This document shows positions 16,198 through 28,074 of a DNA stretch of 64,000 bases, piece after piece. Under the pieces are notes generated by a model that saw nothing but the letters and a program-made list of their open reading frames with translations, made no database searches and was not told the DNA's origin. Positions within the stretch are counted from its first letter, which is position 1; every line of letters begins with the position of its first letter. The translations under genes were made by a program, and so were the position numbers. Location: the IMG/VR virus record IMGVR_UViG_3300034012_003212, positions 62,001 to 126,000 of that record, one strand, 5' to 3'.

Positions 16198-16785
16198 TTA
16201 TCCGATTAAAGACCTATGGATTGCATCCTTAATCGCATCCGAAACATCTTCTTTATTCACACCTTCGAGTAAAACATCGAGCACTTCATCAAAAACACCT
16301 TCATCAAATGATTCTGACACAAATTGCATGAATTGTTTAGTTGGAAGATCGACCTTGATCTCAATACTTAAAGTGTTGCTAGATGTTTTTGCCTTTGCGA
16401 GAAGATTTGCTGCAAAACTTCCAGCCTTTGACTTTTTCTGCTGCTGTTGTTGAACAGGGGCCTCTACTGGTTTTACTGGTTCTGGAATGACTTCAATAGA
16501 CGCGGATTCTGTCTGTTTTTTATGTTCCTCGAATGATTTTGCTGGACCTGTTCTAGAAGGAAACCTTTCTTCCTTTGGATACATCCTTCTTAAAGAAACT
16601 TCATCCATTGCAATATTCCTATCATTGAGTATGATGAATGCCTTTCCGTAAAGATGCATAGGAATTGACCTACCGCTAGCCGGAATCACAACGTCCTGTT
16701 TTCCGTCGAACATCTGTTCGGCTGGTTCAACGACAGCAAATTTATCGTCAGTTAGCCACTGGATGAATTGTTGACCGTTACTCAT
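16198..16785 (-). CDS. Hypothetical protein
   Basis: 195-aa ORF with a central P/E/Q-rich linker. Confidence 0.65.
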   Translation of the reverse strand: MSNGQQFIQWLTDDKFAVVEPAEQMFDGKQDVVIPASGRSIPMHLYGKAFIILNDRNIAMDEVSLRRMYPKEERFPSRTGPAKSFEEHKKQTESASIEVIPEPVKPVEAPVQQQQQKKSKAGSFAANLLAKAKTSSNTLSIEIKVDLPTKQFMQFVSESFDEGVFDEVLDVLLEGVNKEDVSDAIKDAIHRSLIG

Positions 16786-17111
16786 GCAAACAACCTCATT
16801 AAATTATCTTCGTAAAATCTCCTTTTGTCTTGATCCATCTGATCGATCTGGGATAACACAGTATTTTTCAATTGTATTAGAACCTTAGAAAAATGGACCA
16901 CTGCACCATCCGCTAGAACGTCTTTTTGGTTAGACATGAAACTACCGGTTATTCCTTTTAACCTCCAGAATATGTAAGGAGGAGAATCTATATATTCAAT
17001 GGTAACCTGCTTCCAACCAGGAGGTTGTATGAACATCCTATCAGCTTGGTCCCATTCAAGTGATTCTTCTAAATTGTAATCGAGCTTCATACTATATTCC
17101 TTGGCCACCAA
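16782..17111 (-). CDS. Hypothetical protein
   Basis: 109-aa ORF overlapping both neighbours. Confidence 0.6.
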   Translation of the reverse strand: MVAKEYSMKLDYNLEESLEWDQADRMFIQPPGWKQVTIEYIDSPPYIFWRLKGITGSFMSNQKDVLADGAVVHFSKVLIQLKNTVLSQIDQMDQDKRRFYEDNLMRLFA

Positions 17112-17779
17112 TCATCTTTCTGTATACCCATGAGCTCTAAAACTAATTCCAGTTCCCGGTCTGCGTTTATCCTATTGGGTAATTGCCAGTGCTGGCTCCC
17201 AACGGGTTTGGTGTGCTTTACGACAACAGAATCAACTATTCCTAGACCTTCATACTTTAGTTCCTTTGCCCATATTATATCCTGCCCCCAGCCGGAGTAT
17301 GTGATCTTTAACGTCCATAGTAGATTCTTCAGGACCTCAGATTTAAACAATGGGCACATTATCTCGACAAAATTAGTCCTTCTGAATCCATTTTTATTCC
17401 TATTGACGACGAGTTCGAAGCTTCTAAAACTATCTTGTGACAATGACGGCTGGCATATATTGCAGTCATTTGATTCCGCCTCGTCGAATAATCTTACTAT
17501 GTCATCAACTGTACCAAAATCAACATCATAATCAGGAAGCCAGATGTACTTATACTTATTAAAAACTTCCGGCCAATGCGTGTTCAGTATATTGTACAGT
17601 ATATGGTGCTTGAACCCCTTGAATGAAAACGTCTTCATGGACTTTGAAATATCAAAATCCGGTGGTATTGTGTCGAACGATATGTGCGCAACATCGAATC
17701 CAGGGCCGCCGTACAAAGAATTGTAAAAGCCTCCTGGTGCTATCGTACACAACACTAGTCTATCGTTATTGCTTCGCAT
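17087..17779 (-). CDS. DUF707-family putative glycosyltransferase (GT-A-like)
   Basis: YKYIWLPDYD...CQPSLSQDS...RRTNFVEIMCPLF...SGWGQDIIW. Confidence 0.8.
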   Translation of the reverse strand: MRSNNDRLVLCTIAPGGFYNSLYGGPGFDVAHISFDTIPPDFDISKSMKTFSFKGFKHHILYNILNTHWPEVFNKYKYIWLPDYDVDFGTVDDIVRLFDEAESNDCNICQPSLSQDSFRSFELVVNRNKNGFRRTNFVEIMCPLFKSEVLKNLLWTLKITYSGWGQDIIWAKELKYEGLGIVDSVVVKHTKPVGSQHWQLPNRINADRELELVLELMGIQKDDWWPRNIV

Positions 17780-18011: not shown

Positions 18012-18854
18012 TTATTTAAGTATGAATTTTTTTAATAGATTAAGATAATCCTGTTGTTTCATCGATTCTAATCTTTCTTTGTCCGATACTATGCATTCCA
18101 TCTCATTGATAAAAGCATCATTGTTTCCGTCAAAAATAGAAACAATGTTGAATTCATATGGGGTTTTTGCAAGTTCATCTGAATCAAAACCATCTACAAT
18201 CTTTTGTGCAACATCAAAATGCCTCTCGTAGTAGTGTGTGTTGTCAGAGAAATGGTGGTATGTGCCCAGTTTAATGTTTTCATACCCCCTCAACTTCAAT
18301 TGATGCAGCATCGATTGCTGTACTGTTGAGAAGAATGGCGCGTCATATTGCAGTCCATAGAATATATCGTTTGATCTCATCTGTACCTTCATGTTTAATT
18401 TCGAATCTCTGACCCAAAAATTAACATACATCGTACACACGAAATCTTTTACACCACTTTTCTGGTAATCAGGGGTGTTAAACACCATAACAGCTTGTCT
18501 TGTGTTTATATCATTCGCGAGACAGTCCAATGCCCACTGGAACTGATCATGATTCCTCTTTTGAATGATGTAGCCATAATTGGAATTTATGATTCCATTC
18601 ACTCTGAGATTATCCCAGAAATTAGAGAAGTGGCGGATCTTGTCAGTAGAAAGATCGCACAACATGTACCACCACAATTCTCCTGCAAAATATTTCCAGT
18701 TGAACTTCCTCGATGAGAAGTTCATGATACAGAGTCTGGGATCGATCTCTAGGTGTGTGAGAGTCTTTTCCCTCACCTTTAGGTTTCTTGGCGCACATTC
18801 ATCCTGCATTGTAATCAGAAGATCGTACACACACTGATTTAGGCTTTTAGGCAT
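18012..18854 (-). CDS. gp42: dCMP hydroxymethylase-like enzyme (thymidylate synthase superfamily, cytosine-specific clade)
   Basis: YFAGELWWY, KDFVCTMY and MRSNDIFYGLQYD parallel T4 gp42 (RELEWY, SDFMCTNT, MRSNDVVFGFRND); Asp rather than Asn at the specificity position. Confidence 0.8.
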   Translation of the reverse strand: MPKSLNQCVYDLLITMQDECAPRNLKVREKTLTHLEIDPRLCIMNFSSRKFNWKYFAGELWWYMLCDLSTDKIRHFSNFWDNLRVNGIINSNYGYIIQKRNHDQFQWALDCLANDINTRQAVMVFNTPDYQKSGVKDFVCTMYVNFWVRDSKLNMKVQMRSNDIFYGLQYDAPFFSTVQQSMLHQLKLRGYENIKLGTYHHFSDNTHYYERHFDVAQKIVDGFDSDELAKTPYEFNIVSIFDGNNDAFINEMECIVSDKERLESMKQQDYLNLLKKFILK

Positions 18855-18884: not shown

Positions 18885-19970
18885 TTAAAAGAGCGCAACA
18901 GATCTGTTGGGATTTTGAAATTTATTCTTCTCGTCATTCTCAAAATTGTACTGATAACTGCTTCTTGAAAGATGCACGGATCCAGGCTTTTCCATGAATT
19001 TTGATGAGTATTCCTCTGGATCGATTGTATACCAAAAATCTGGCCATGTTATAGGGGCAAATCCCAATCTAGAACTATGTTCCATAAGTTCATCGTTGAA
19101 CAATCTCATAACATTGGATCGTTCTTCCCTTGAACCAAAGAATGGAGTTCCCTTGTACCAACCGGTTTTAGGTATACGTCTGTCCTCGTTTTCTATTGGG
19201 AGGAGGCACACAGGAGAAACAGTTTCAAGTTCGTACGAATCCATAAGTTTTACGAGGGATTCCATGTATTTGTTGCATAACTTTACGGCGGAATCCTGTG
19301 GATTAGATTCGCGAAGCAAATGGTGCCTAACATCTATATTACCGAAGTATGTTATGACATTCTTTGGGTAAACACCATCATAGATGAATTTGGATAAATC
19401 GCCGTCTTTTATGGCTCCATATAGCGTCTTTCCGTCGTTTCTATTTATGTTCGATCCAGGAACATACACTGAAACAGTGTGACTATCGCCCATGGCAAAC
19501 ACTTCGGATCGAAGGACGACTCGAACGGTTGGCACATTTGAACATATGTCACTGAACTGTGATGGATTCAATGATTTCCAAAAATCTTCACATGAGTTCA
19601 TCCTAGACAGAAGAACTGTTCCATAATCTGGCATTCTTTCATTCAAGCAGAATATGTCTCCGTTGAATATAGCCAGTCTGTTTATTCGATGTGCGTTTTC
19701 GTCACTCGCGCCCGAGAACATATTGAATGTTCCCTTATAGTCCATGGGAAGAAGGACTAGCCATGCGTCGAATTCATTCACGTCCTGTCCCTTTTCGAGT
19801 AACTTTGCATCAATTCCGGCGTGTCTCAGCTGATTGATGACAAGAAATGTCCAGGAGGATTTATGGCTTTCTGGCTTTTTGCTATACGTAGAAATAACGT
19901 CATCTACACAGACCTTTTTGCCATGCAATCTTTTTGATAGATCATAGACATCAATAAATGTTTGCATCAC
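18885..19970 (-). CDS. Two-domain protein: T4 beta-glucosyltransferase-like N-terminal domain plus SGNH-like domain; putative DNA-modifying enzyme
   Basis: N-terminus DVNEFDAWLV...FNMFSG...FNGDIFCLNERMPDY; C-terminus GDSH, DGKTLYG, YFGNID, SVHL; lies directly upstream of the hydroxymethylase. Confidence 0.5.
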   Translation of the reverse strand: MMQTFIDVYDLSKRLHGKKVCVDDVISTYSKKPESHKSSWTFLVINQLRHAGIDAKLLEKGQDVNEFDAWLVLLPMDYKGTFNMFSGASDENAHRINRLAIFNGDIFCLNERMPDYGTVLLSRMNSCEDFWKSLNPSQFSDICSNVPTVRVVLRSEVFAMGDSHTVSVYVPGSNINRNDGKTLYGAIKDGDLSKFIYDGVYPKNVITYFGNIDVRHHLLRESNPQDSAVKLCNKYMESLVKLMDSYELETVSPVCLLPIENEDRRIPKTGWYKGTPFFGSREERSNVMRLFNDELMEHSSRLGFAPITWPDFWYTIDPEEYSSKFMEKPGSVHLSRSSYQYNFENDEKNKFQNPNRSVALF

Positions 19971-20263
19971 TTTCCATTCAGATAGTTTTCTAATGCCTGT
20001 ATGTATGCGACAGCATCCAAGAGATTATCTTGTTTATGTGTATAGCTCTCTCTGGATAGTTTTAGGGCTATCATGGCCTTGTACATGTGTTCTGCGTCAA
20101 GTGTTAGGCCAGTCATGCCATTGAATATTTGCGCAGCTCTCGCCATACCTTCCGAGAATGGTCCATACTGTCTTTCCTTTTCCTCCGACCTCTGGTTAAC
20201 TATTTTATCTGCCTGTTGCAGTATACTATCTTCATTGGTCTTTGTTTGTTTCTTGGGTTTCAT
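19967..20263 (-). CDS. DUF6378-family protein (MazG-like all-alpha nucleotide pyrophosphatase candidate)
   Basis: ILQQADKIVNQRSEEKERQYGPF...MIALKLSRE...DNLLDAVAYI. Confidence 0.75.
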   Translation of the reverse strand: MKPKKQTKTNEDSILQQADKIVNQRSEEKERQYGPFSEGMARAAQIFNGMTGLTLDAEHMYKAMIALKLSRESYTHKQDNLLDAVAYIQALENYLNGK

Positions 20264-20280
20264 ATGGTATAGTTATGATT

Positions 20281-20700
20281 CTAAAAGACTTCTTCTGTTT
20301 TTACCCATTCCATGTATTTTATCAGGACTCTGTCCTTTGGTTTAACGCGGTTGTCATGTCTTTGAAAAATCATCCATGAATCTCTTGCGTATTCCCCGAT
20401 TCCATGCAATTCACTAGGATCTTCCCCGTTCCACTGGAGCCATTCATTCGAGAATCGTATGAGCTTCTTTGAACGAATATTCTGAAACCCGAGTGGTTTT
20501 ATACATCGCGCGACTTCAATTGGATCTGCCTTAGATAATCTATCTGCATTGGGGTACTTTTCAAAAAATTCATGTCTGACCAGGTCAACTTGACGAAAAC
20601 TCGTCTGGTTCAACATCATGCAGACCACCAGCATCTTCCATGGATCATCTCGGTATATTTCTTGTCTCAGATTATACGGACTTAATTTAGGATGTTTCAT
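20281..20700 (-). CDS. MBD4-like HhH-GPD DNA glycosylase (T/U:G mismatch type)
   Basis: DDPWKMLVVCMMLNQT...FFEKYP...IKPLG...ELHGIGEYARDSWMIF...VKPKDRVLIKY; catalytic Asp retained (cf. MBD4 VHPEDHKLNKY). Confidence 0.85.
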   Translation of the reverse strand: MKHPKLSPYNLRQEIYRDDPWKMLVVCMMLNQTSFRQVDLVRHEFFEKYPNADRLSKADPIEVARCIKPLGFQNIRSKKLIRFSNEWLQWNGEDPSELHGIGEYARDSWMIFQRHDNRVKPKDRVLIKYMEWVKTEEVF

Positions 20701-21731: not shown

Positions 21732-22373
21732 TTACACTTTATACCATTCACGATTTCTAGATTCATCACTCTCGCACCAATCATCAAACGATATGGCATT
21801 TGCATCCTTTTCTGAAAGTATCGGATCAATTCCTAGATCTTTCCAGTCACAATCAAATGAGTCCCATCTGATTGATCTTTCCTTTTCATGAAACCTGTTC
21901 TCGTCGCATTTATAGCAAACATCCGCAACATCACTTAGAACCTGAAACCCATTTGCAAAACCGCTAGGAATCCATACCATCTTTGGTTCATTATCATTTA
22001 GATGTATCTTCACATGCTTACCGAATGTAGGGGATCCTCTACGGAGATCTAGTTCAACGAGCAAGATCTCGCCCCTGACAACTCTTATCAGTTTCCCCAT
22101 ACCAAACATGTACTGAAAGTGCATACCTCGGATCACGCCACGCTTTGATCTTGAGTGATTATCCTGAACGAATGATCCCGGAAGATCGTTATACGCGAAT
22201 GAGATCTTATTGAAACTTTCTTGAAAGAAACCACGATCATCCTCAAATCTCTTTCCTGTTATGATTTCCACGCCACCGAGAACAACTTCTATGCTATCTA
22301 TTGCATTTTTGCTCATAAGGCTGATTTTCTTGTGTATTGAATCCAAGGATTCTCGTGAATTTTTTAGTTCCAT
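21732..22373 (-). CDS. rmlC: dTDP-4-dehydrorhamnose 3,5-epimerase
   Basis: FEDDRGFFQESF...FVQDNHSRSKRGVIRGMHFQ...DLRRGSPTFG...WIPSGFANGFQVLS. Confidence 0.95.
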   Translation of the reverse strand: MELKNSRESLDSIHKKISLMSKNAIDSIEVVLGGVEIITGKRFEDDRGFFQESFNKISFAYNDLPGSFVQDNHSRSKRGVIRGMHFQYMFGMGKLIRVVRGEILLVELDLRRGSPTFGKHVKIHLNDNEPKMVWIPSGFANGFQVLSDVADVCYKCDENRFHEKERSIRWDSFDCDWKDLGIDPILSEKDANAISFDDWCESDESRNREWYKV

Positions 22374-22503: not shown

Positions 22504-24333
22504 TTATGCCAAACCTGCTGTCGGCGGCTCAACCCAGAAAGTGTAGTATTGTGCTTCGGGGTAGAAACCAGCGTCAACCAGAGCGTAACGGCTCTTCACT
22601 GCGATCTTCGGCGACATTGTACCTTCAGCGATTGTGCTGATGGACTCTGCCATGAGGTAAGGCATGAACTTGATACCGGGTTCGATATCTGCACCCTTAC
22701 GACCAACGAGAACGCGTGTATCTTCCCATGTCATGTTAGGATCAACATAAACTGTCATTCCGAACAATGTACCAGCGGGATACAATTGGCCATTAGATTG
22801 GTTGAGGTTGTTATCAAACGGAGAGAACGTGAAGCCCTTAACAACGTTCAATGCCGAAATAACTTGGGCATTTGTAACGATGAAGTTAGCCGGGCCACGA
22901 CGACCGCGTGTGTGAATCAGGTTAGAAGCAGCATGGATCTTGCTAACAATACGATGTTGTACCGTTGTCAAGTTCTCGAATCCACCGTAATCAGCGAATG
23001 CGGGGATGTTGTTGCTCCAAGAAATTGCGCTATCAGATTTACCGATGAAGCTCAGAGTAGATGCGGATGTAGTTTGTGTAGCATCGCATGACAGGTTAAG
23101 AGTAAAACCTTGTGTCTGATAAACATCGTAGTTGTTCTGCCAGCCAAGTGCGAATGCACGGCTCAAGATGTGCTTGTTGATCGTCTGAGAAACTTCGTTA
23201 ACCAACACGCCTTCTGCCATACCAAGGATGTCGATACCGAATTGACGGTTAAGATCCTGGATCTGCTCAGTTGTTACGCTGATGTTAACTTGGAATGTAC
23301 CAGCCTGAACGTTCTTTGTGAACGTCTGGATGCCCATCGAACGTGAATACGTAGATTCACCGGTCGAACGATTCATCGGATCGTATGCCTTTGTACCATC
23401 GGTGAAAGGACCATTCCATGTGTTTGTGTCACTGTTGCCAGCGCCAGAAGGACCATATATGTGATTCTCGAGAGCCGATACGTATGTAGGCTTGTTGCCG
23501 TTGCAGCTTGCGAATGCTTCTGTATCTGCTGTGTTTGCGGATGCTTGACCTACGATCGCAGAGTAGGAACTGGTAGTGTTACCAAAACCGAATACGTCAG
23601 CGATGGAAACTGTGTTCTCATTTGTGCCTGCTGTGTATGCACCAGTCGATGCGATAGTACCAGTAGAAGTTACGCGGAAAATCAAATCGCCAGTAACGAA
23701 TGACTTACCTACGTATATCACCTTTGCAGCAGAGGTTGCTGCTAGTGTAACAGCATAACCTGTTCCGCTAGCAGTGTTCGAAGAAGCTTGTAGAGGCAAT
23801 GCATAATATGTCGTTCCAACTGCAAGTTGATCTGTGCTTGCATCGTATATAGAGCTAGTAGCGACTGCAAACATCAACGGTTGGTTTGTATTTGCATTCA
23901 AGTTATCAGCTGTATCAAGTTTACCACCAGCATAGATATAATCCATGTAAGGAAGGATACCTGTCGGACCCGGCATGGGGATAACCGAAACGATATCGAA
24001 ACCTATTGTCTTTGCTGCAACTTGGATAGCAAGAGGAAGCAACGACGGGAATTTATCACCAGAGCCTTGGTAAGCTGCATTATAGAAACCGGAAGCCGAT
24101 GTGCCATAAGCTGTACCGAGGTTAACTGCGCCCTGACCGGGAACGTTGATGAGCTGCGCAAGACCTGTGCCTTGGAAAGACTCGTTGAGGGATGAACTTT
24201 CGTTCATCTGATGGTAGTGGCAATACTTCGACAACCAAGTAGTCTTGTAGTTGTCGTTGACACCAACATCCTTAAGTACCGGGGCCCACTCGTTTACAAC
24301 TTGAGCCTCATTTATATGCATAAGATTATTCAT
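22504..24333 (-). CDS. gp23: Major capsid protein, T4 gp23-like
   Basis: LLPLAIQVAAKTIGFDIVSVIPMPGPTG...EQIQDLNRQFGID...RGRRGPANFIV...YMPYLMAE-like KFMPYLMAE...PKIAVKSRYALV. Confidence 0.95.
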   Translation of the reverse strand: MNNLMHINEAQVVNEWAPVLKDVGVNDNYKTTWLSKYCHYHQMNESSSLNESFQGTGLAQLINVPGQGAVNLGTAYGTSASGFYNAAYQGSGDKFPSLLPLAIQVAAKTIGFDIVSVIPMPGPTGILPYMDYIYAGGKLDTADNLNANTNQPLMFAVATSSIYDASTDQLAVGTTYYALPLQASSNTASGTGYAVTLAATSAAKVIYVGKSFVTGDLIFRVTSTGTIASTGAYTAGTNENTVSIADVFGFGNTTSSYSAIVGQASANTADTEAFASCNGNKPTYVSALENHIYGPSGAGNSDTNTWNGPFTDGTKAYDPMNRSTGESTYSRSMGIQTFTKNVQAGTFQVNISVTTEQIQDLNRQFGIDILGMAEGVLVNEVSQTINKHILSRAFALGWQNNYDVYQTQGFTLNLSCDATQTTSASTLSFIGKSDSAISWSNNIPAFADYGGFENLTTVQHRIVSKIHAASNLIHTRGRRGPANFIVTNAQVISALNVVKGFTFSPFDNNLNQSNGQLYPAGTLFGMTVYVDPNMTWEDTRVLVGRKGADIEPGIKFMPYLMAESISTIAEGTMSPKIAVKSRYALVDAGFYPEAQYYTFWVEPPTAGLA

Positions 24334-24347
24334 GTTTGTTTATTTTT

Positions 24348-26222
24348 TTAAATTTTTCCTTTGAGTGCTTTTCTTACAGCGTCACGGTATTCAGAATTTC
24401 CGCTATTCACGTTCTCAAGAACGGAATAAGGATTTGCTGATTCGTTTAGCGTTTGGACTGAACTACCATCAAAATTTGCGATTTCCGGCCTCGATGCCCA
24501 GAAGTTGCGAATCTGATATGGCGTATCTAATTTTATGTACTGAGCAGCAGCTGCGATTCGCTTCCTGCCATCATTACTCATAGATTCCCATATAGGAGCG
24601 TATTCCGTCGGCATCTCTGCGATCCACTTAGGAAGATTTCGACGCTCTCTATCTGCTGCCAGTGCAGATTCCCAAACATTCACTACATCCTTTTCCGAGA
24701 ATACTATAGCTGTGCTCAATGCTTCGCTCACTATCTCTTTTTCAGTTTGCTTAAGCTGTACGAACTTGCTACGCTTTTCCGGCGAAAGATAACGAAGGAA
24801 CGGGAATTTGGAGGACTCATTCATAACGCTTGCCTTCTCTTTTTTGGCTTCGCTTATCATGTGGTCCACTTTCTCCGATAAGTTTCGTCCACCGATCATG
24901 GCAGCTCTCTTCTCCATGATCTTTTTTGTTTTCTTCTTTTCTTTAACATTGATCGATTCTGCTATGTAATCTCCATAGCCTATTGATTTGTCGAGTTGTT
25001 CTGCGAGGTAGTTACTGTAGCCTATGTTACTATTGAGATTTTCGGCCAAGTAATCATTGTGTTTGATCGCATTGTCAAGATTCTCTCCAAGATATTCTTG
25101 GTATCGAATTGAATTATTGAGATTTTCTGAAAGGTAGTTAGAGTAATCTATCGCCTTATCAAAATTCTCAGCTATATAGTTAGAATAGTCAATCGTCTGG
25201 TTGATCTTGTTGGAAAGATAATTCGAGAACGATATGCTCTTGTCGAGATTCTCTGCAAGGTAGTTCTGATATTCAATAGAAACATTGAACCTATTTGCAA
25301 GGTAATTCGTGTACTCTGTGATATCATTCATATCGCGGCGTGCCTTCTTTGACTCGGAGATCGTCTTATCAACGTTCTCAGAGAGGTAATTGCTATACTT
25401 GATAGCACCGTTAAGCTTTTGTGCGAGATAATTAGAATATTCGCTCAGCTTAGATATTGTTTTTTCTGACCCAAGACTCTTCTTGGTGAGGACCTGTATT
25501 TTCTTCTCAAGGAGCTCTATTTCCTTCTTAACGTGTTTAGAGTACTCATTGAAATCCCTTTCAGAAATCATACCTGTGTTTTGGTTATTTTGGCTCATAT
25601 TATCACTTTTATTTTGCGTTTGTTTTCCTTTTGTTTCATTCGAAAGAAATGGCAATTCTGAATCATACATCTCAGAGACGTCATATATCTGTACATTTGA
25701 TTTGCCGGAGAATCCGAGGGATTCATTCACCAAACTAAGGGTGGCATTCTCAAATCCAGGATCAGCAACCAAATCGTATGTGAAAATCTTCTTTAGTTTT
25801 ACGCGTTTATCGGATCCTACAACGCCAGCAGCCCTGCTGCTTATGGACAAAGGAACCCCAGCTTCTATCAATTTCTTCGCCTGGCGGCCGGGATCTGTAT
25901 CTAGTAGACGAACGCGCCCTCTAACTGTCCTTGTTGCATTATCATAATCCAAGCTCTCGATTATGTGAGAGACTTTCTGAAGAGAGATATCAAATTTATC
26001 CGGATGATCTAATTCACCCATCAACCTTTTCGAACTTATTTTTGTTTTCAGGTATTCGAGGTGGGGCAAATATTCATTCTCTTCGTACAATCGGTCGTTA
26101 TTGTTAACAACACCAAACTGAGCAAATACTCCTTCGAGTATGACTGCTCCTGTTGAATCTGACTTGCTCTCAAGTATCGCGTTCGAATTCTCGAGAATAA
26201 GTAGCACTTTTTGTTGGTCCAT
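24348..26222 (-). CDS. gp21: Prohead protease (gp21/S78-S80-like) fused to a scaffold/core domain
   Basis: ILEGVFAQFGVVNNNDRLY...GELDHP...SHIIE...LLDTDPG...ISSRAAG...YDLVADPGFENA, followed by 14-aa helical repeats. Confidence 0.9.
   Translation of the reverse strand: MDQQKVLLILENSNAILESKSDSTGAVILEGVFAQFGVVNNNDRLYEENEYLPHLEYLKTKISSKRLMGELDHPDKFDISLQKVSHIIESLDYDNATRTVRGRVRLLDTDPGRQAKKLIEAGVPLSISSRAAGVVGSDKRVKLKKIFTYDLVADPGFENATLSLVNESLGFSGKSNVQIYDVSEMYDSELPFLSNETKGKQTQNKSDNMSQNNQNTGMISERDFNEYSKHVKKEIELLEKKIQVLTKKSLGSEKTISKLSEYSNYLAQKLNGAIKYSNYLSENVDKTISESKKARRDMNDITEYTNYLANRFNVSIEYQNYLAENLDKSISFSNYLSNKINQTIDYSNYIAENFDKAIDYSNYLSENLNNSIRYQEYLGENLDNAIKHNDYLAENLNSNIGYSNYLAEQLDKSIGYGDYIAESINVKEKKKTKKIMEKRAAMIGGRNLSEKVDHMISEAKKEKASVMNESSKFPFLRYLSPEKRSKFVQLKQTEKEIVSEALSTAIVFSEKDVVNVWESALAADRERRNLPKWIAEMPTEYAPIWESMSNDGRKRIAAAAQYIKLDTPYQIRNFWASRPEIANFDGSSVQTLNESANPYSVLENVNSGNSEYRDAVRKALKGKI
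24948..25445 (-). repeat. About 11 copies of a 14-aa repeat, xYSNYLAENLDKSI
   Basis: EYQNYLAENLDKSI / DYSNYIAENFDKAI / DYSNYLSENLNNSI / RYQEYLGENLDNAI / GYSNYLAEQLDKSI. Confidence 0.9.
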
Positions 26223-26254
26223 TTTAATTAGTTATTTCTATAAATCCGATGTTT

Positions 26255-26262
26255 TATATATC
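26255..26262 (-). promoter_or_regulatory. Putative late promoter GATATATA upstream of gp21-gp23
   Basis: Lies about 33 nt upstream of the ATG; the same motif precedes the sheath, chaperone, lysozyme and S1 genes. Confidence 0.7.
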
Positions 26263-26317
26263 AACACTAGTGGGAAAAAATTAAATTTTTTTCTCAATTT
26301 GTCCCTATAATTTTAGA

Positions 26318-27388
26318 TTATGCTAAAAACATCCTTTGTTCCTTTGACCTTCTTTCAGAAAGACCCGACAGAGTTCTACCCTGTGACTTAACCCAACGAG
26401 GGAACTCTGATGCAGCCCCTGCATAGTCCTTCGAATTGATCTTTTTCAGAAGAGTGCTTTTTTTGAAATTGCCAAACCCGACGTTGTACGCAAAAGAAAC
26501 GAGAGCATCCCATTGATTCTGTGTAACGGGGACTTTGACGACTGATCTCATCTTCTGTTCAAATTTTCCTACGACCCTTCTCATCATGGAATCTGCCTGT
26601 TCCCTTGTTATCGGTCCCATGTTTGGATTTTTAACACCTACACCGAATCCAATCGAATATCCATTTCCATCTTTGTATGCATTCTGCTTGAAACCCTCGT
26701 ATGCCTGTATGGCCTGGATTCCGCGTTCAGAGATTCGAATGTTTGATGGATTTATCGTCCCGGACGGTTGGTATGGTTCAAATTCGGTGGTGTCTGCATC
26801 ACCTGAACCATCATCTTTTGTTCCAGCCAAAGCAATAGAGCTTGTGGCCGCAGATGAGGTTATTCCGATTGATGCTAATTTCGGTAGGTCTTTTAGCGGA
26901 ACCTTTGTGACGATATTTACGCCCGATGAAGGGTCTTTGAAATACCCGAAGAAGTCTTTCTGCTGGACGTCGATGTTCTCGCCGTTCTTTGCGTCCTTTG
27001 ATAGAGCAATCTTGGCGTCTATGATCTTTTTTATCCTCGGATAAACAGAAACGACCATATCATCACTGACTGCGTCTGAATCAACGTCAGTCAATATGTT
27101 TACGTGTTTTATGGCAGTTGAAAGATCTGCCTTTGCTGTTGTTATATCGAGCCCGGAATCCTTCAAAAAGGACTCATGTTTGTCGATGAGTTTCAGGAGC
27201 TTGTCCCTATCGAACATCACCTGAACTGAAAATTTTTTCCGCTGAGATTGTTTTTCGCCTGATAGATATCTAAGTAATACCTGAAGATCAGAATAATTGA
27301 ACCCGTCGTTAAGGCAGGAAAGTATCCTAACAAACGCTACATTATAAGGGATGATATCCTCTATGTTCTCTAAAAGAAAATATTTCAT
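26318..27388 (-). CDS. GH24 phage lysozyme domain with a ~210-aa N-terminal extension
   Basis: ISERGIQAIQAYEGFKQNAYKD...SIGFG...TQNQWDALVSFAYNVG...STLLKKIN...EFPRWV...GLSERRSKE. Confidence 0.9.
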   Translation of the reverse strand: MKYFLLENIEDIIPYNVAFVRILSCLNDGFNYSDLQVLLRYLSGEKQSQRKKFSVQVMFDRDKLLKLIDKHESFLKDSGLDITTAKADLSTAIKHVNILTDVDSDAVSDDMVVSVYPRIKKIIDAKIALSKDAKNGENIDVQQKDFFGYFKDPSSGVNIVTKVPLKDLPKLASIGITSSAATSSIALAGTKDDGSGDADTTEFEPYQPSGTINPSNIRISERGIQAIQAYEGFKQNAYKDGNGYSIGFGVGVKNPNMGPITREQADSMMRRVVGKFEQKMRSVVKVPVTQNQWDALVSFAYNVGFGNFKKSTLLKKINSKDYAGAASEFPRWVKSQGRTLSGLSERRSKEQRMFLA

Positions 27389-27405: not shown

Positions 27406-28074
27406 TCACACATGAATTGCAAGCAGCTCCGGAAGTTGAACATACTTAAACATCTTCCCTAGTCTATCGTATGTGTATCCATCGTTGTAATAACCCTTCT
27501 CTCCTATGAAATGATCCCAGCCACACTCCATCATGGATTTTGCACGAACAACAACCTGTAGTGTATCTATGTTCTGGAATACAGGAGGGACTCCACTTAT
27601 TACTTGAGGAGCATTACCTAAGTGAGAAGGAAGGGGGCCTAGATGCAATATCTTGCATACAGAAAACTCTGAATCAGGGTTCTCATTGAGTATATCTATA
27701 TTTTTTTTAACAAAATCAGGAAAAAGAAGATTATCATCATCGAGATGGATGATGAATTTGCATACATCATTTTGTATGTCATCCGCAAGTATATTATTCA
27801 TAACATGATGACGCACACCGCCTCCGTATGAATTTGTATTCACTGCGGTATAATCATACACAAGCTTTACGTGTTCCGGTAGCACTTCCTGTATTTCCTC
27901 TACGATTGAGCATGCGTGATCTTCTTTTGGGCCGTCTGAACACACTATCTGAAGAATATCAAGATTATTTGGTTTGATCTGCCATGCAACAGATGTTAAG
28001 CATCTTTTTATTATATCTCCATTTCTCTTATATGTGGGAGTTATGACTGCGATGTATGGATTGATGTTTTGCAT
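27406..28074 (-). CDS. Glycosyltransferase family 2
   Basis: IAVITPTYKR...CSDG...IIHLDDDNLLFPD. Confidence 0.85.
   Translation of the reverse strand: MQNINPYIAVITPTYKRNGDIIKRCLTSVAWQIKPNNLDILQIVCSDGPKEDHACSIVEEIQEVLPEHVKLVYDYTAVNTNSYGGGVRHHVMNNILADDIQNDVCKFIIHLDDDNLLFPDFVKKNIDILNENPDSEFSVCKILHLGPLPSHLGNAPQVISGVPPVFQNIDTLQVVVRAKSMMECGWDHFIGEKGYYNDGYTYDRLGKMFKYVQLPELLAIHV

What the first reader, a model, noticed from the sequence alone, without database searches (positions are those of the whole stretch)
18885..19970. Beta-glucosyltransferase acceptor-like domain fused to an SGNH domain: a possible DNA base acyltransferase
Seen: the N-terminal ~130 aa resemble by eye the T4 BGT N-terminal Rossmann domain (DVNEFDAWLV...FNMFSG...FNGDIFCL vs DVNDYDRLIV...INFFGG...YKSKIYYL). 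The usual sugar-donor domain is replaced by SGNH blocks: GDS(H), G, GNxD, and a terminal SVH with no canonical DxxH Asp. Established: SGNH domains act as O-acyltransferases in polysaccharide systems (AlgX, PatB, OatA). Inference: a base-flipping domain coupled to acyl transfer could O-acylate hmC or its sugar, or alternatively remove such a group.
Basis: inference. Interest (0 to 1): 0.82.

Follow-up and report, generated by a model that had tools for sequence, protein, structure and literature searches.

The report
BGT-like domain fused to SGNH enzyme
This phage gene joins the DNA-acceptor half of T4's hydroxymethylcytosine glucosyltransferase to an esterase/acyltransferase-type domain, and it belongs to a large unnamed viral family that most likely modifies hydroxymethylcytosine in phage DNA in a way not yet described.

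Summary
Window 18885-19970 (minus strand) is an intact 361-aa ORF (likely ATG start at 19967). A confident model (pLDDT 92) shows two domains.

- **C-terminal half:** an SGNH fold (Foldseek probability 1.0). GDSH, GNID and SVH are invariant; the usual DxxH Asp is missing.
- **N-terminal half:** residues 17-114 are homologous to residues 1-104 of the T4 beta-glucosyltransferase (BGT) family (hhalign 96.9%, E 2e-10; 100 shuffles reach at most 34 against 73). The invariant N-x-F-x-G loops align. Foldseek did not pick out BGT.

Context supports a role on 5hmC DNA.
- The next gene is a dCMP hydroxymethylase by published diagnostic residues, and an MBD4-type glycosylase lies upstream.
- The family has more than 820 viral proteins, all unnamed.
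- It occurs in Aeromonas phages 44RR, 31 and 25, which make hmC but have no glucosyltransferase.
- It carries the same C-terminal ..[SA]LF tail as the phages' DNA polymerase.
- It is repeatedly fused to, or followed by, proteins resembling amino-acid:DNA transferases; no DNA kinase was found beside them.

Best reading, all inferred: a clamp-tethered enzyme that O-acylates the 5-hydroxymethyl group. No activity, donor or product has been tested.

The parts
18885..19970 (-). Target ORF: 361 aa from GTG 19970, or 360 aa from ATG 19967; stop codon at 18885-18887
   Evidence: PHROG 13881 (8.5e-57), function unknown; no Pfam or NCBIfam hit
19515..19970 (-). N-terminal Rossmann-like domain, residues 1-152
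   Evidence: Domain model pLDDT 94. Invariant S35 H36 W40 N83 F85 G87 lie in loops after beta strands
19629..19922 (-). Core homologous to T4 BGT residues 1-104 (target residues 17-114)
   Evidence: hhalign 96.9%, E 2e-10; shuffle and reversal controls; reciprocal HMMER
19710..19724 (-). N83-M-F85-S-G87 loop, aligned to the BGT family's N70-F-F72-G73-G74
18936..19514 (-). SGNH-fold catalytic domain, residues about 153-345
   Evidence: Foldseek PDB probability 1.0 to sialate O-acetylesterase, PAF-AH, Axe2 and TesA; weak Lipase_GDSL hits in 10 of 39 members; ESM Atlas neighbours are GDSL clusters
19479..19490 (-). Block I, G161-D162-S163-H164 (putative nucleophile Ser163)
   Evidence: Invariant; codons GGC GAT AGT CAC read
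19332..19343 (-). Block III, G210-N211-I212-D213 (oxyanion-hole Asn), followed by invariant R215 H216 H217
   Evidence: codons read
18972..18980 (-). Block V, S331-V332-H333 (putative general-base His). No Asp at position -3; E327 is invariant
   Evidence: codons read
19131..19187 (-). Highly conserved loop E262..R264..P267-K268-T269-G270..G279 that the model leaves disordered (pLDDT below 50 at residues 266-275); a candidate substrate-contacting lid
   Evidence: its role is inferred
18888..18902 (-). C-terminal tail S-V-A-L-F, a putative sliding-clamp-binding peptide
   Evidence: The LF end occurs in 72/82 family members, 29/35 HMUDK_hel partners and 6/7 polymerase C-fragments, against 34/2051 other ORFs. 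It is the only window ORF of 60 aa or more that ends in LF
18012..18854 (-). dCMP hydroxymethylase (thymidylate-synthase homologue), immediately downstream
   Evidence: Best solved relative is T4 gp42 (1.8e-18). Asp at E. coli ThyA positions 177 and 143, and Asp kept at 169; criteria from PMC13326640
19967..20263 (-). DUF6378 protein, overlapping the target start (TGATG)
   Evidence: Pfam 6.6e-12. Directly upstream of the target in 69 of 79 related loci
20281..20700 (-). MBD4-type HhH-GPD mismatch glycosylase
   Evidence: E 4.5e-30 over the full length to the MBD4 glycosylase domain
17087..17779 (-). DUF707-like protein downstream of the hydroxymethylase; conserved in the sister locus L055. 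Whether it belongs to the pathway is uncertain
   Evidence: Pfam DUF707 4.5e-6; synteny

Best explanation
The protein is a post-replicative DNA-modifying enzyme that acts on 5-hydroxymethylcytosine (5hmC). The adjacent hydroxymethylase makes 5hm-dCMP, which is incorporated into phage DNA. The target's C-terminal ..ALF tail docks it on the sliding clamp behind the polymerase. Its BGT-derived N-domain binds the DNA and the flipped 5hmC, as the acceptor side of BGT does. The SGNH domain takes the place of BGT's UDP-glucose domain. It uses Ser163 and His333, with Asn211 in the oxyanion hole, to form an acyl-enzyme from a cellular acyl donor, and it passes the acyl (probably acetyl) group to the 5-CH2OH, giving 5-acyloxymethylcytosine. 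In most relatives an AADT/aGPT-Pplase-like partner (HMUDK_hel or 'u404' type, often fused to the enzyme) would then displace the ester with a nucleophile made by the variable cassette. On that reading acylation plays the leaving-group role that phosphorylation by 5-HMUDK plays for 5hmU. No such partner lies in this 64-kb window, so here the ester may be the final mark, or the partner may lie elsewhere in the 260-kb genome. Shown: the two-domain architecture, the homologies, the synteny, the fusions and the shared tail. Inferred: clamp binding, base flipping, acyl transfer, the donor and the activation role.
For: Architecture and conserved catalytic residues. BGT N-domain homology with invariant loops aligned. 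5hmC supply next door. MBD4-type glycosylase, fitting repair of deaminated 5hmC. The cultured carriers are Aeromonas phages 44RR, 31 and 25, which have genes 42 and 56 but no glucosyltransferase, with the fate of their hmC unknown (PMC2993671; gene 42 seen). The polymerase-like C-terminal tail. T4 alpha-GT is reported to bind gp45 (Sommer 2004, listed as reference 20 in PMC13216743). Fusions: TARGET+HMUDK_hel in 44RR (BLASTP 6e-27), MT21+HMUDK_hel+TARGET, and eight TARGET+u404 representatives. The partners resemble amino-acid:DNA transferases. All 46 loci with at least 6 kb downstream carry hel, u404 or a hydroxymethylase within 6 kb. No conserved Walker-A kinase lies within the cassettes. The nearest SGNH structures are acetyl esterases.
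Against: No activity, donor or product is known. No acyl-carrier or acyl-CoA gene is conserved nearby. The DxxH Asp is missing. Foldseek does not single out BGT. The position aligned to BGT's catalytic Asp100 varies (N/D/E/H). This window has no AADT-like partner. Phage 25 and some other loci pair the gene with sugar genes instead (GLF, a GT31-like protein), which an activation role does not explain. In part of the family the nearby TS homologue is a canonical ThyA, so the source of hydroxymethylpyrimidine there is unknown. A 247-aa Walker-A protein of unknown function lies about 9 kb downstream in 14 loci, and kinases could be encoded elsewhere in these genomes.
Confidence: 0.4

Rival explanations
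1. The enzyme O-acetylates or de-acetylates the sugar or cyclitol already attached to 5hmC, as SGNH enzymes do on glycans, rather than acting on the hydroxymethyl group itself.
For: The nearest structures are carbohydrate and sialate O-acetylesterases. Every cassette carries sugar or cyclitol genes: Ino1 plus a HAD-like phosphatase plus FkbM methyltransferase, a Na:solute symporter in 44RR, UDP-galactopyranose mutase in phage 25, and DUF707, a rhamnose epimerase and a GT2 in this window.
Against: The enzyme stays constant while the adduct pathways differ. The BGT-type acceptor loop is invariant, which suggests the same acceptor as BGT. Fusion to AADT-like transferases points to an adjacent step on the base.
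Confidence: 0.2
2. It is a hydrolase that removes an ester from modified DNA or from a pathway intermediate (trimming or editing), not a transferase.
For: Most SGNH enzymes are hydrolases. All the structural neighbours are esterases or thioesterases. No dedicated acyl-donor gene was found in the neighbourhood.
Against: No enzyme that would install such an ester was seen in the loci. A purely hydrolytic step is an odd partner for a fused DNA transferase.
Confidence: 0.15
3. It works on free nucleotides (5hm-dCMP or the dNTP pool) together with DUF6378, not on DNA.
For: It is translationally coupled to DUF6378, which elsewhere is fused to the DUF4406 domain; from memory, DUF4406 is nucleoside-deoxyribosyltransferase-like. 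Neighbours include the hydroxymethylase, MazG-like NTP pyrophosphatases and ribonucleotide reductase.
Against: The C-terminal tail matches the DNA polymerase's. The N-domain is homologous to a DNA-acceptor domain. The fusion partners are DNA-transferase-like.
Confidence: 0.1
4. The N-domain is a generic Rossmann-like module, the BGT similarity reflects fold rather than common function, and the protein has no role in DNA modification (for example a cell-envelope esterase).
For: Foldseek finds only generic alpha/beta folds for the N-domain: E at least 0.025 in PDB, and outside the family at least 0.015 in BFVD. BLASTP is not significant.
Against: hhalign gives 96.9% with controls. The invariant loops coincide. 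Synteny, fusions, the shared tail and the phyletic pattern all point to DNA.
Confidence: 0.05

Closest known systems
T4 beta-glucosyltransferase (BGT; Pfam PF09198)
   Same: The N-terminal Rossmann-like core is homologous (target residues 17-114 to BGT 1-104). The N-x-F-x-G loop is invariant in both families. Both genes sit next to a dCMP hydroxymethylase. Both are expected to act on 5hmC in DNA after replication.
   Different: The UDP-glucose (donor) domain is absent and replaced by an SGNH domain. The position aligned to catalytic Asp100 is not conserved. There is no PF09198 hit. The predicted chemistry is acyl transfer or hydrolysis, not glycosyl transfer.
SGNH/GDSL hydrolases and SGNH O-acyltransferases (sialate O-acetylesterase, PAF-AH, Axe2, TesA; PatB/OatA/AlgX-type)
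   Same: The fold is the same. Blocks I, III and V sit in canonical order and position, with an invariant Ser, Asn and His.
   Different: There is no DxxH Asp, and the block II Gly is not invariant. Extra invariant Arg, His and Glu residues are present (R177, R215, H216, H217, R264, R284, E262, E327). There is a conserved disordered loop. The predicted acceptor is a DNA base, and no MBOAT or AT3 donor partner is present.
5-HMUDK plus amino-acid:DNA transferase (aGPT-Pplase2) thymidine hypermodification pathway (PMC8989533)
   Same: A hydroxymethylpyrimidine is made by a TS homologue. An AADT-like partner is adjacent or fused. PLP enzymes and variable tailoring genes are present.
   Different: The base is cytosine. 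No P-loop DNA kinase was found in the cassettes, and the BGT-N/SGNH enzyme occupies its place. The nucleophile genes differ (inositol synthesis or uptake). The window itself lacks the transferase partner.
T4 alpha-glucosyltransferase, reported to interact with the clamp gp45 (Sommer 2004, cited in PMC13216743)
   Same: It is a precedent for a 5hmC-modifying enzyme recruited by the sliding clamp.
   Different: Here the evidence is only a C-terminal tail shared with the polymerase. Binding has not been tested.

Membership tests
T4 BGT family (PF09198) | N-terminal Rossmann-like acceptor-side domain | tested here: met
   hhalign 96.9%, E 2e-10, 92 columns; controls; reciprocal HMMER 15-21 bits. 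Foldseek did not rank BGT in its top 50.
T4 BGT family (PF09198) | C-terminal UDP-glucose-binding Rossmann domain (GT-B donor domain) | tested here: not met
   The full-length profile aligns only to BGT residues 1-104. The C-terminal half is an SGNH fold. No PF09198 hit in any of 39 members even at E up to 10.
T4 BGT family (PF09198) | Invariant Thr99-Asp100 (Asp100 is the proposed catalytic base; its role is stated from memory) | tested here: not met
   T99 and D100 are invariant in 25 BGT relatives. The aligned position is N110 in the target and N/D/E/H across the family.
SGNH/GDSL hydrolase superfamily | SGNH fold | tested here: met
   Foldseek probability 1.0, target-normalised TM-score 0.5-0.6 to many SGNH structures; model pLDDT 92.
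SGNH/GDSL hydrolase superfamily | Block I GDS nucleophile and block III GxND | tested here: met
   G161 D162 S163 and G210 N211 I212 D213 are invariant in 39 sequences and lie just after beta strands.
SGNH/GDSL hydrolase superfamily | Block V DxxH (Asp-His of the triad) | tested here: inconclusive
   H333 is invariant, but position -3 is G/K/R/Q. E327 is invariant and might substitute, or the enzyme may use a Ser-His dyad.
SGNH/GDSL hydrolase superfamily | Pfam Lipase_GDSL above the gathering score | tested here: not met
   No hit for the window protein. Weak hits in 10 of 39 members, best E 3.3e-4.
SGNH O-acyltransferases (PatB/OatA/AlgX type) | Transfer of the acyl-enzyme to a hydroxyl acceptor rather than to water | not testable with these tools
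   This needs an enzyme assay.
SGNH O-acyltransferases (PatB/OatA/AlgX type) | Dedicated acyl-donor partner (MBOAT or AT3 type) | tested here: not met
   None among the conserved neighbour families in 83 loci.
Kinase-primed hydroxymethylpyrimidine hypermodification (5-HMUDK + AADT) | TS-homologue hydroxymethylase | tested here: met
   The window gene has Asp at ThyA positions 177 and 143 and keeps Asp169, so it is the cytosine, hydroxymethyl type.
Kinase-primed hydroxymethylpyrimidine hypermodification (5-HMUDK + AADT) | P-loop 5-hm DNA kinase | tested here: not met
   No Walker A in the HMUDK_hel, u404, u368 or u132 proteins. The only conserved Walker-A cluster that could be a kinase is a 247-aa protein of unknown function about 9 kb away. 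None found in the window.
Kinase-primed hydroxymethylpyrimidine hypermodification (5-HMUDK + AADT) | AADT/aGPT-Pplase-like transferase | tested here: inconclusive
   Present or fused in relatives but absent from this 64-kb window. The rest of the 260-kb genome was not seen.
Sliding-clamp clients | C-terminal clamp-binding peptide resembling that of the cognate polymerase | tested here: met
   LF end in 72/82 family members against 34/2051 background, and 6/7 polymerase C-fragments in the same loci. The 44RR fusion ends ..SLDGLFAI, compared with T4 gp43 ..SLDFLFG. Binding itself was not tested.

The most novel reading that the evidence does not exclude
Phages use O-acylation of 5-hydroxymethylcytosine in DNA, by a clamp-tethered BGT-N/SGNH enzyme, as the leaving-group step of a cytosine hypermodification pathway. 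AADT-like partners then attach inositol-derived or amino-acid-derived groups. This would be an ester-based counterpart of the kinase-primed thymidine pathway, and it would yield DNA bases not yet described, for example in Aeromonas phages 44RR, 31 and 25.
Probability: 0.3. Interest if true: 0.9.

Novelty: new variant of a known kind. Interest (0 to 1): 0.8.

Why it matters
No SGNH enzyme was found described as acting on a DNA base in the papers searched, and no acylated hydroxymethylpyrimidine is known in natural DNA to my knowledge. The family is large: more than 820 clusters at 90% identity and 286 at 50%. It is exclusively viral and entirely unnamed. It would answer a question left open in 2010, namely what Aeromonas phages 44RR, 31 and 25 do with their hmC when they have no glucosyltransferase. 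It also shows how a DNA-acceptor domain can be recombined with a different catalytic module. Because cultured phages carry the gene, the prediction can be tested directly by mass spectrometry and simple enzyme assays. A new modifying activity on 5hmC would also interest groups working on restriction evasion and on 5hmC labelling tools.

Tried and rejected
- **Direct sequence searches gave nothing.** Pfam, NCBIfam and PDB sequence searches of the target found nothing usable.
- **Structure search was generic.** Foldseek of the isolated N-domain against PDB and BFVD gave only generic alpha/beta folds and family members, not BGT.
- **No close phage record.** Megablast of the region against GenBank phages found no match.
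- **Partner genes are absent from the window.** phmmer and HMM searches for HMUDK_hel, u404, u368, Ino1, MT21, PALP and gp56 found none.
- **hhalign did not link the partner families.** It found no relationship among HMUDK_hel, u404 and u368. The ESM Atlas later linked u404 to HMUDK_hel/ADDT clusters.
- **DUF6378 stays unexplained.** hhalign against MazG-like proteins and gp56 showed no relation.
- **No solved relatives.** The HMUDK_hel profile and the 247-aa Walker-A protein found nothing in the PDB.
- **Contig intersection failed.** Too few hits came back to intersect hydroxymethylase loci with target contigs.
- **5-hydroxycytosine synthase rejected.** I considered this reading for the TS homologue, but Asp169 is retained.
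- **No prior description found.** Literature searches for SGNH, inositol or DUF6378 in DNA hypermodification found no description of this family.

Full report
**The ORF.** Window 18885-19970 holds one intact ORF on the minus strand, 361 aa from a GTG. The next codon is ATG (19967-19965) and overlaps the stop of the upstream gene as TGATG (read). The identical database protein has 360 aa and comes from a 260,658-bp viral contig. Pfam and NCBIfam give nothing. PHROGs places it in two families of unknown function. The family is large: 820 clusters at 90% identity with E below 1e-3 and 286 clusters at 50% identity for the N-domain alone. Every neighbour in the ESM Atlas is a viral 'hypothetical protein'.

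**The two domains.** An AlphaFold model built on 39 diverse homologues is confident as a whole (pLDDT 92, pTM 0.90). That also implies a fixed arrangement of the two domains.
- Foldseek against the PDB matches residues from about 153 onward to SGNH hydrolases at probability 1.0. These include sialate O-acetylesterase, PAF acetylhydrolase, Axe2 and TesA.
- The SGNH blocks are invariant and sit after the expected strands: G161-D-S163-H, G210-N211-I-D213 and S331-V-H333.
- The Asp of DxxH is missing, because position -3 is G/K/R/Q. E327 is invariant.
- Other invariant residues (R177, D179, T182, R215, H216, H217, E262, R264, R284) suggest an anionic substrate. This is my inference.
- A very conserved loop (..IPKTG.YKGTPF.G) is the only disordered part of the model. 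This is what one would expect of a substrate-induced lid; that reading is also inferred.

**The BGT resemblance.**
- The family profile against one BGT sequence gives 53.6%.
- Against a 25-member BGT family profile it gives 96.9%, E 2e-10, over 92 columns. Target residues 17-114 align to BGT 1-104.
- Reversed alignments score 0.1-0.2%. One hundred block shuffles score 17.4 +/- 4.0 (maximum 34.1) against the real 73.2.
- Reciprocal HMMER searches give 15-21 bits, and the BGT profile hits all 120 family members.
- The family's invariant N83, F85 and G87 fall on the BGT family's N70, F72 and G74.
- BGT's invariant T99-D100 aligns to a variable polar position (N110 here).
- Foldseek of the N-domain alone (pLDDT 94) returns only generic alpha/beta folds from the PDB, and family members from BFVD. 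BGT is not in either top 50.

I take this as homology of the acceptor-side core, with the donor domain replaced. The protein is not a member of the BGT family.

**Neighbours in the window.**
- Directly downstream (18012-18854) is a thymidylate-synthase homologue whose best solved relative is T4 dCMP hydroxymethylase (1.8e-18). It has Asp at the positions of E. coli ThyA N177 and L143 and keeps D169. By the criteria in PMC13326640 it is a 5hm-dCMP synthase, not a thymidylate synthase or a 5-hydroxy-dCMP synthase.
- Upstream are a DUF6378 gene (19967-20263) and a full-length MBD4-type glycosylase (20281-20700, E 4.5e-30). Such a glycosylase would suit repair of deaminated 5hmC; that link rests on my knowledge of MBD4.
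- The window is from a T4-like virus, with a gp23-type capsid protein and a prohead protease.

**Relatives.** In 83 related loci the gene order is conserved.
- DUF6378 lies directly upstream in 69 of 79 loci.
- All 46 loci with at least 6 kb downstream carry one of three companions within 6 kb: an HMUDK_hel protein (24), a 404-aa family I call u404 (17, plus one with a hydroxymethylase as well), or a hydroxymethylase only (4, the window type).
- The HMUDK_hel cassette also has inositol-3-phosphate synthase, a small DxDG (HAD-like) protein and an FkbM methyltransferase. The u404 cassette has a PLP enzyme.
- The partners are physically fused to the enzyme. In 44RR the 795-aa ORF233c is target plus HMUDK_hel (BLASTP 6e-27). 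A 981-aa protein is methyltransferase plus HMUDK_hel plus target. Eight representatives are target plus u404.
- The ESM Atlas places u404 among clusters carrying HMUDK_hel, ADDT (amino-acid:DNA transferase) and aGPT-Pplase3, with structural TM-scores of 0.62-0.70.
- By eye, all partner families share an E-x3-C motif. This recalls the essential Cys/Glu pair of the characterised transferases (PMC8989533).
- No Walker-A kinase is part of these cassettes.

**Cultured carriers.** tblastn finds the family in Aeromonas phages of the 44RR/31 and 25 types, in IME13 and, partially, in Tenacibaculum phages. Petrov et al. (PMC2993671) list 44RR, 31 and 25 as having genes 42 and 56, alc and denB but no glucosyltransferase, and say the fate of their hmC is unknown. 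I confirmed gene 42 of the hydroxymethylase type in 44RR. In 44RR the fusion gene sits next to a Na:solute symporter. In phage 25 the standalone gene follows a UDP-galactopyranose mutase and an unknown 358-aa protein.

**The tail.** The family ends in ..[ST][SA]LF in 72 of 82 complete copies. The HMUDK_hel proteins do so in 29 of 35, and the DNA polymerase C-terminal fragments of the same loci in 6 of 7. Among all other ORFs the figure is 34 of 2051; 16 of those are the ribonucleotide reductase small subunit and 6 are the polymerase fragments just mentioned. The 44RR fusion ends ..SLDGLFAI, like T4 gp43 (..SLDFLFG). The C-terminus of T4-family polymerases binds the sliding clamp (my own knowledge), and T4 alpha-glucosyltransferase is reported to bind gp45 (reference 20 in PMC13216743). 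I infer clamp recruitment, and therefore action on newly made DNA.

**Interpretation.** The evidence establishes a BGT-derived acceptor domain joined to an apparently active SGNH domain, in a 5hmC-producing phage, in a family tied to DNA-transferase-like partners and to the replisome. The most economical mechanism is O-acylation of the 5-hydroxymethyl group. Where AADT-like partners are present and no kinase is seen, the ester would serve as the leaving group that phosphate provides in thymidine hypermodification. This is inference (confidence about 0.4).

The alternatives are acetylation or de-acetylation of an attached sugar or cyclitol, a purely hydrolytic role, or a nucleotide-level role. 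The evidence against the main reading is as follows:
- No acyl-donor gene is conserved nearby.
- The triad Asp is missing.
- This window contains no partner.
- Some loci have sugar genes instead of a partner.
- In one clade the nearby TS homologue is a canonical ThyA.
- An unexplained Walker-A protein lies 9 kb away in 14 loci.

**Novelty.** No paper in the searched library describes the family or an SGNH enzyme in DNA hypermodification.

Noticed in passing
window 20281-20700 (-): A 139-aa protein matching the whole MBD4 mismatch-glycosylase domain (E 4.5e-30). HhH-GPD genes also sit near the target in 7 related loci (for example L088). It may repair deaminated 5hmC (5hmU:G).
   Followed up: partly
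window 19967-20263 (-): The DUF6378 gene overlaps the target start (TGATG) and is directly upstream in 69 of 79 loci. Elsewhere DUF6378 is fused to DUF4406. Its function is unknown; hhalign shows no relation to MazG-like proteins or gp56.
   Followed up: partly
window 16782-17111 (-): A 109-aa ORF downstream of the DUF707 gene ends ..NLMRLFA, a tail resembling the clamp-type endings.
   Followed up: no
window 17087-17779, 21732-22373, 27406-28074 (-): Sugar-related genes in a T4-like virus: a DUF707-like protein, a dTDP-4-dehydrorhamnose 3,5-epimerase (8e-54) and a family-2 glycosyltransferase. They may act on DNA, the capsid or the host envelope.
   Followed up: no
L004, L010, L012, L023 and similar loci; L001 4366-5889: The cassette of inositol-3-phosphate synthase, a DxDG (HAD-like) 132-aa protein and an FkbM methyltransferase sits next to the target. 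In 44RR a Na:solute symporter takes its place. This suggests a cyclitol or sugar is supplied for the modification.
   Followed up: partly
L096 4773-6954 (Aeromonas phage 25): UDP-galactopyranose mutase (5e-54) and an unannotated 358-aa protein lie immediately upstream of the standalone homologue. Both are absent from 44RR.
   Followed up: partly
L076 11165-11959; L049 11052-11927; L068 11041-11907: Single-locus insertions right after the target: a CitG-like triphosphoribosyl-dephospho-CoA synthase (8e-11), a strong PALP enzyme (8e-68) and a GT31/Fringe-like protein.
   Followed up: no
L010 19911-20660 and 13 other loci: A 247-aa Walker-A protein with no Pfam or PDB relative lies between the ribonucleotide reductase and the polymerase C-fragment. 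It could be a dNMP kinase or a DNA kinase.
   Followed up: partly
L097 2282-3472 (Serratia phage phiMAM1 gp083): This Ackermannviridae 'hypothetical protein' next to a MazG-like gene is homologous to the HMUDK_hel partners (1.6e-16). It has no Walker A and keeps the E-x3-C motif.
   Followed up: partly
L056 16251-17219; L049 17211-18266: In these loci the nearby TS homologue is a canonical thymidylate synthase (Asn177, Leu143), so the source of hydroxymethylpyrimidine in that clade is unknown.
   Followed up: partly
window 22504-27388 (-): Structural and lysis genes just upstream of the modification block: a gp23-type major capsid protein, a prohead protease fused to a long C-terminal extension (624 aa), and a 356-aa lysozyme-domain protein.
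   Followed up: no
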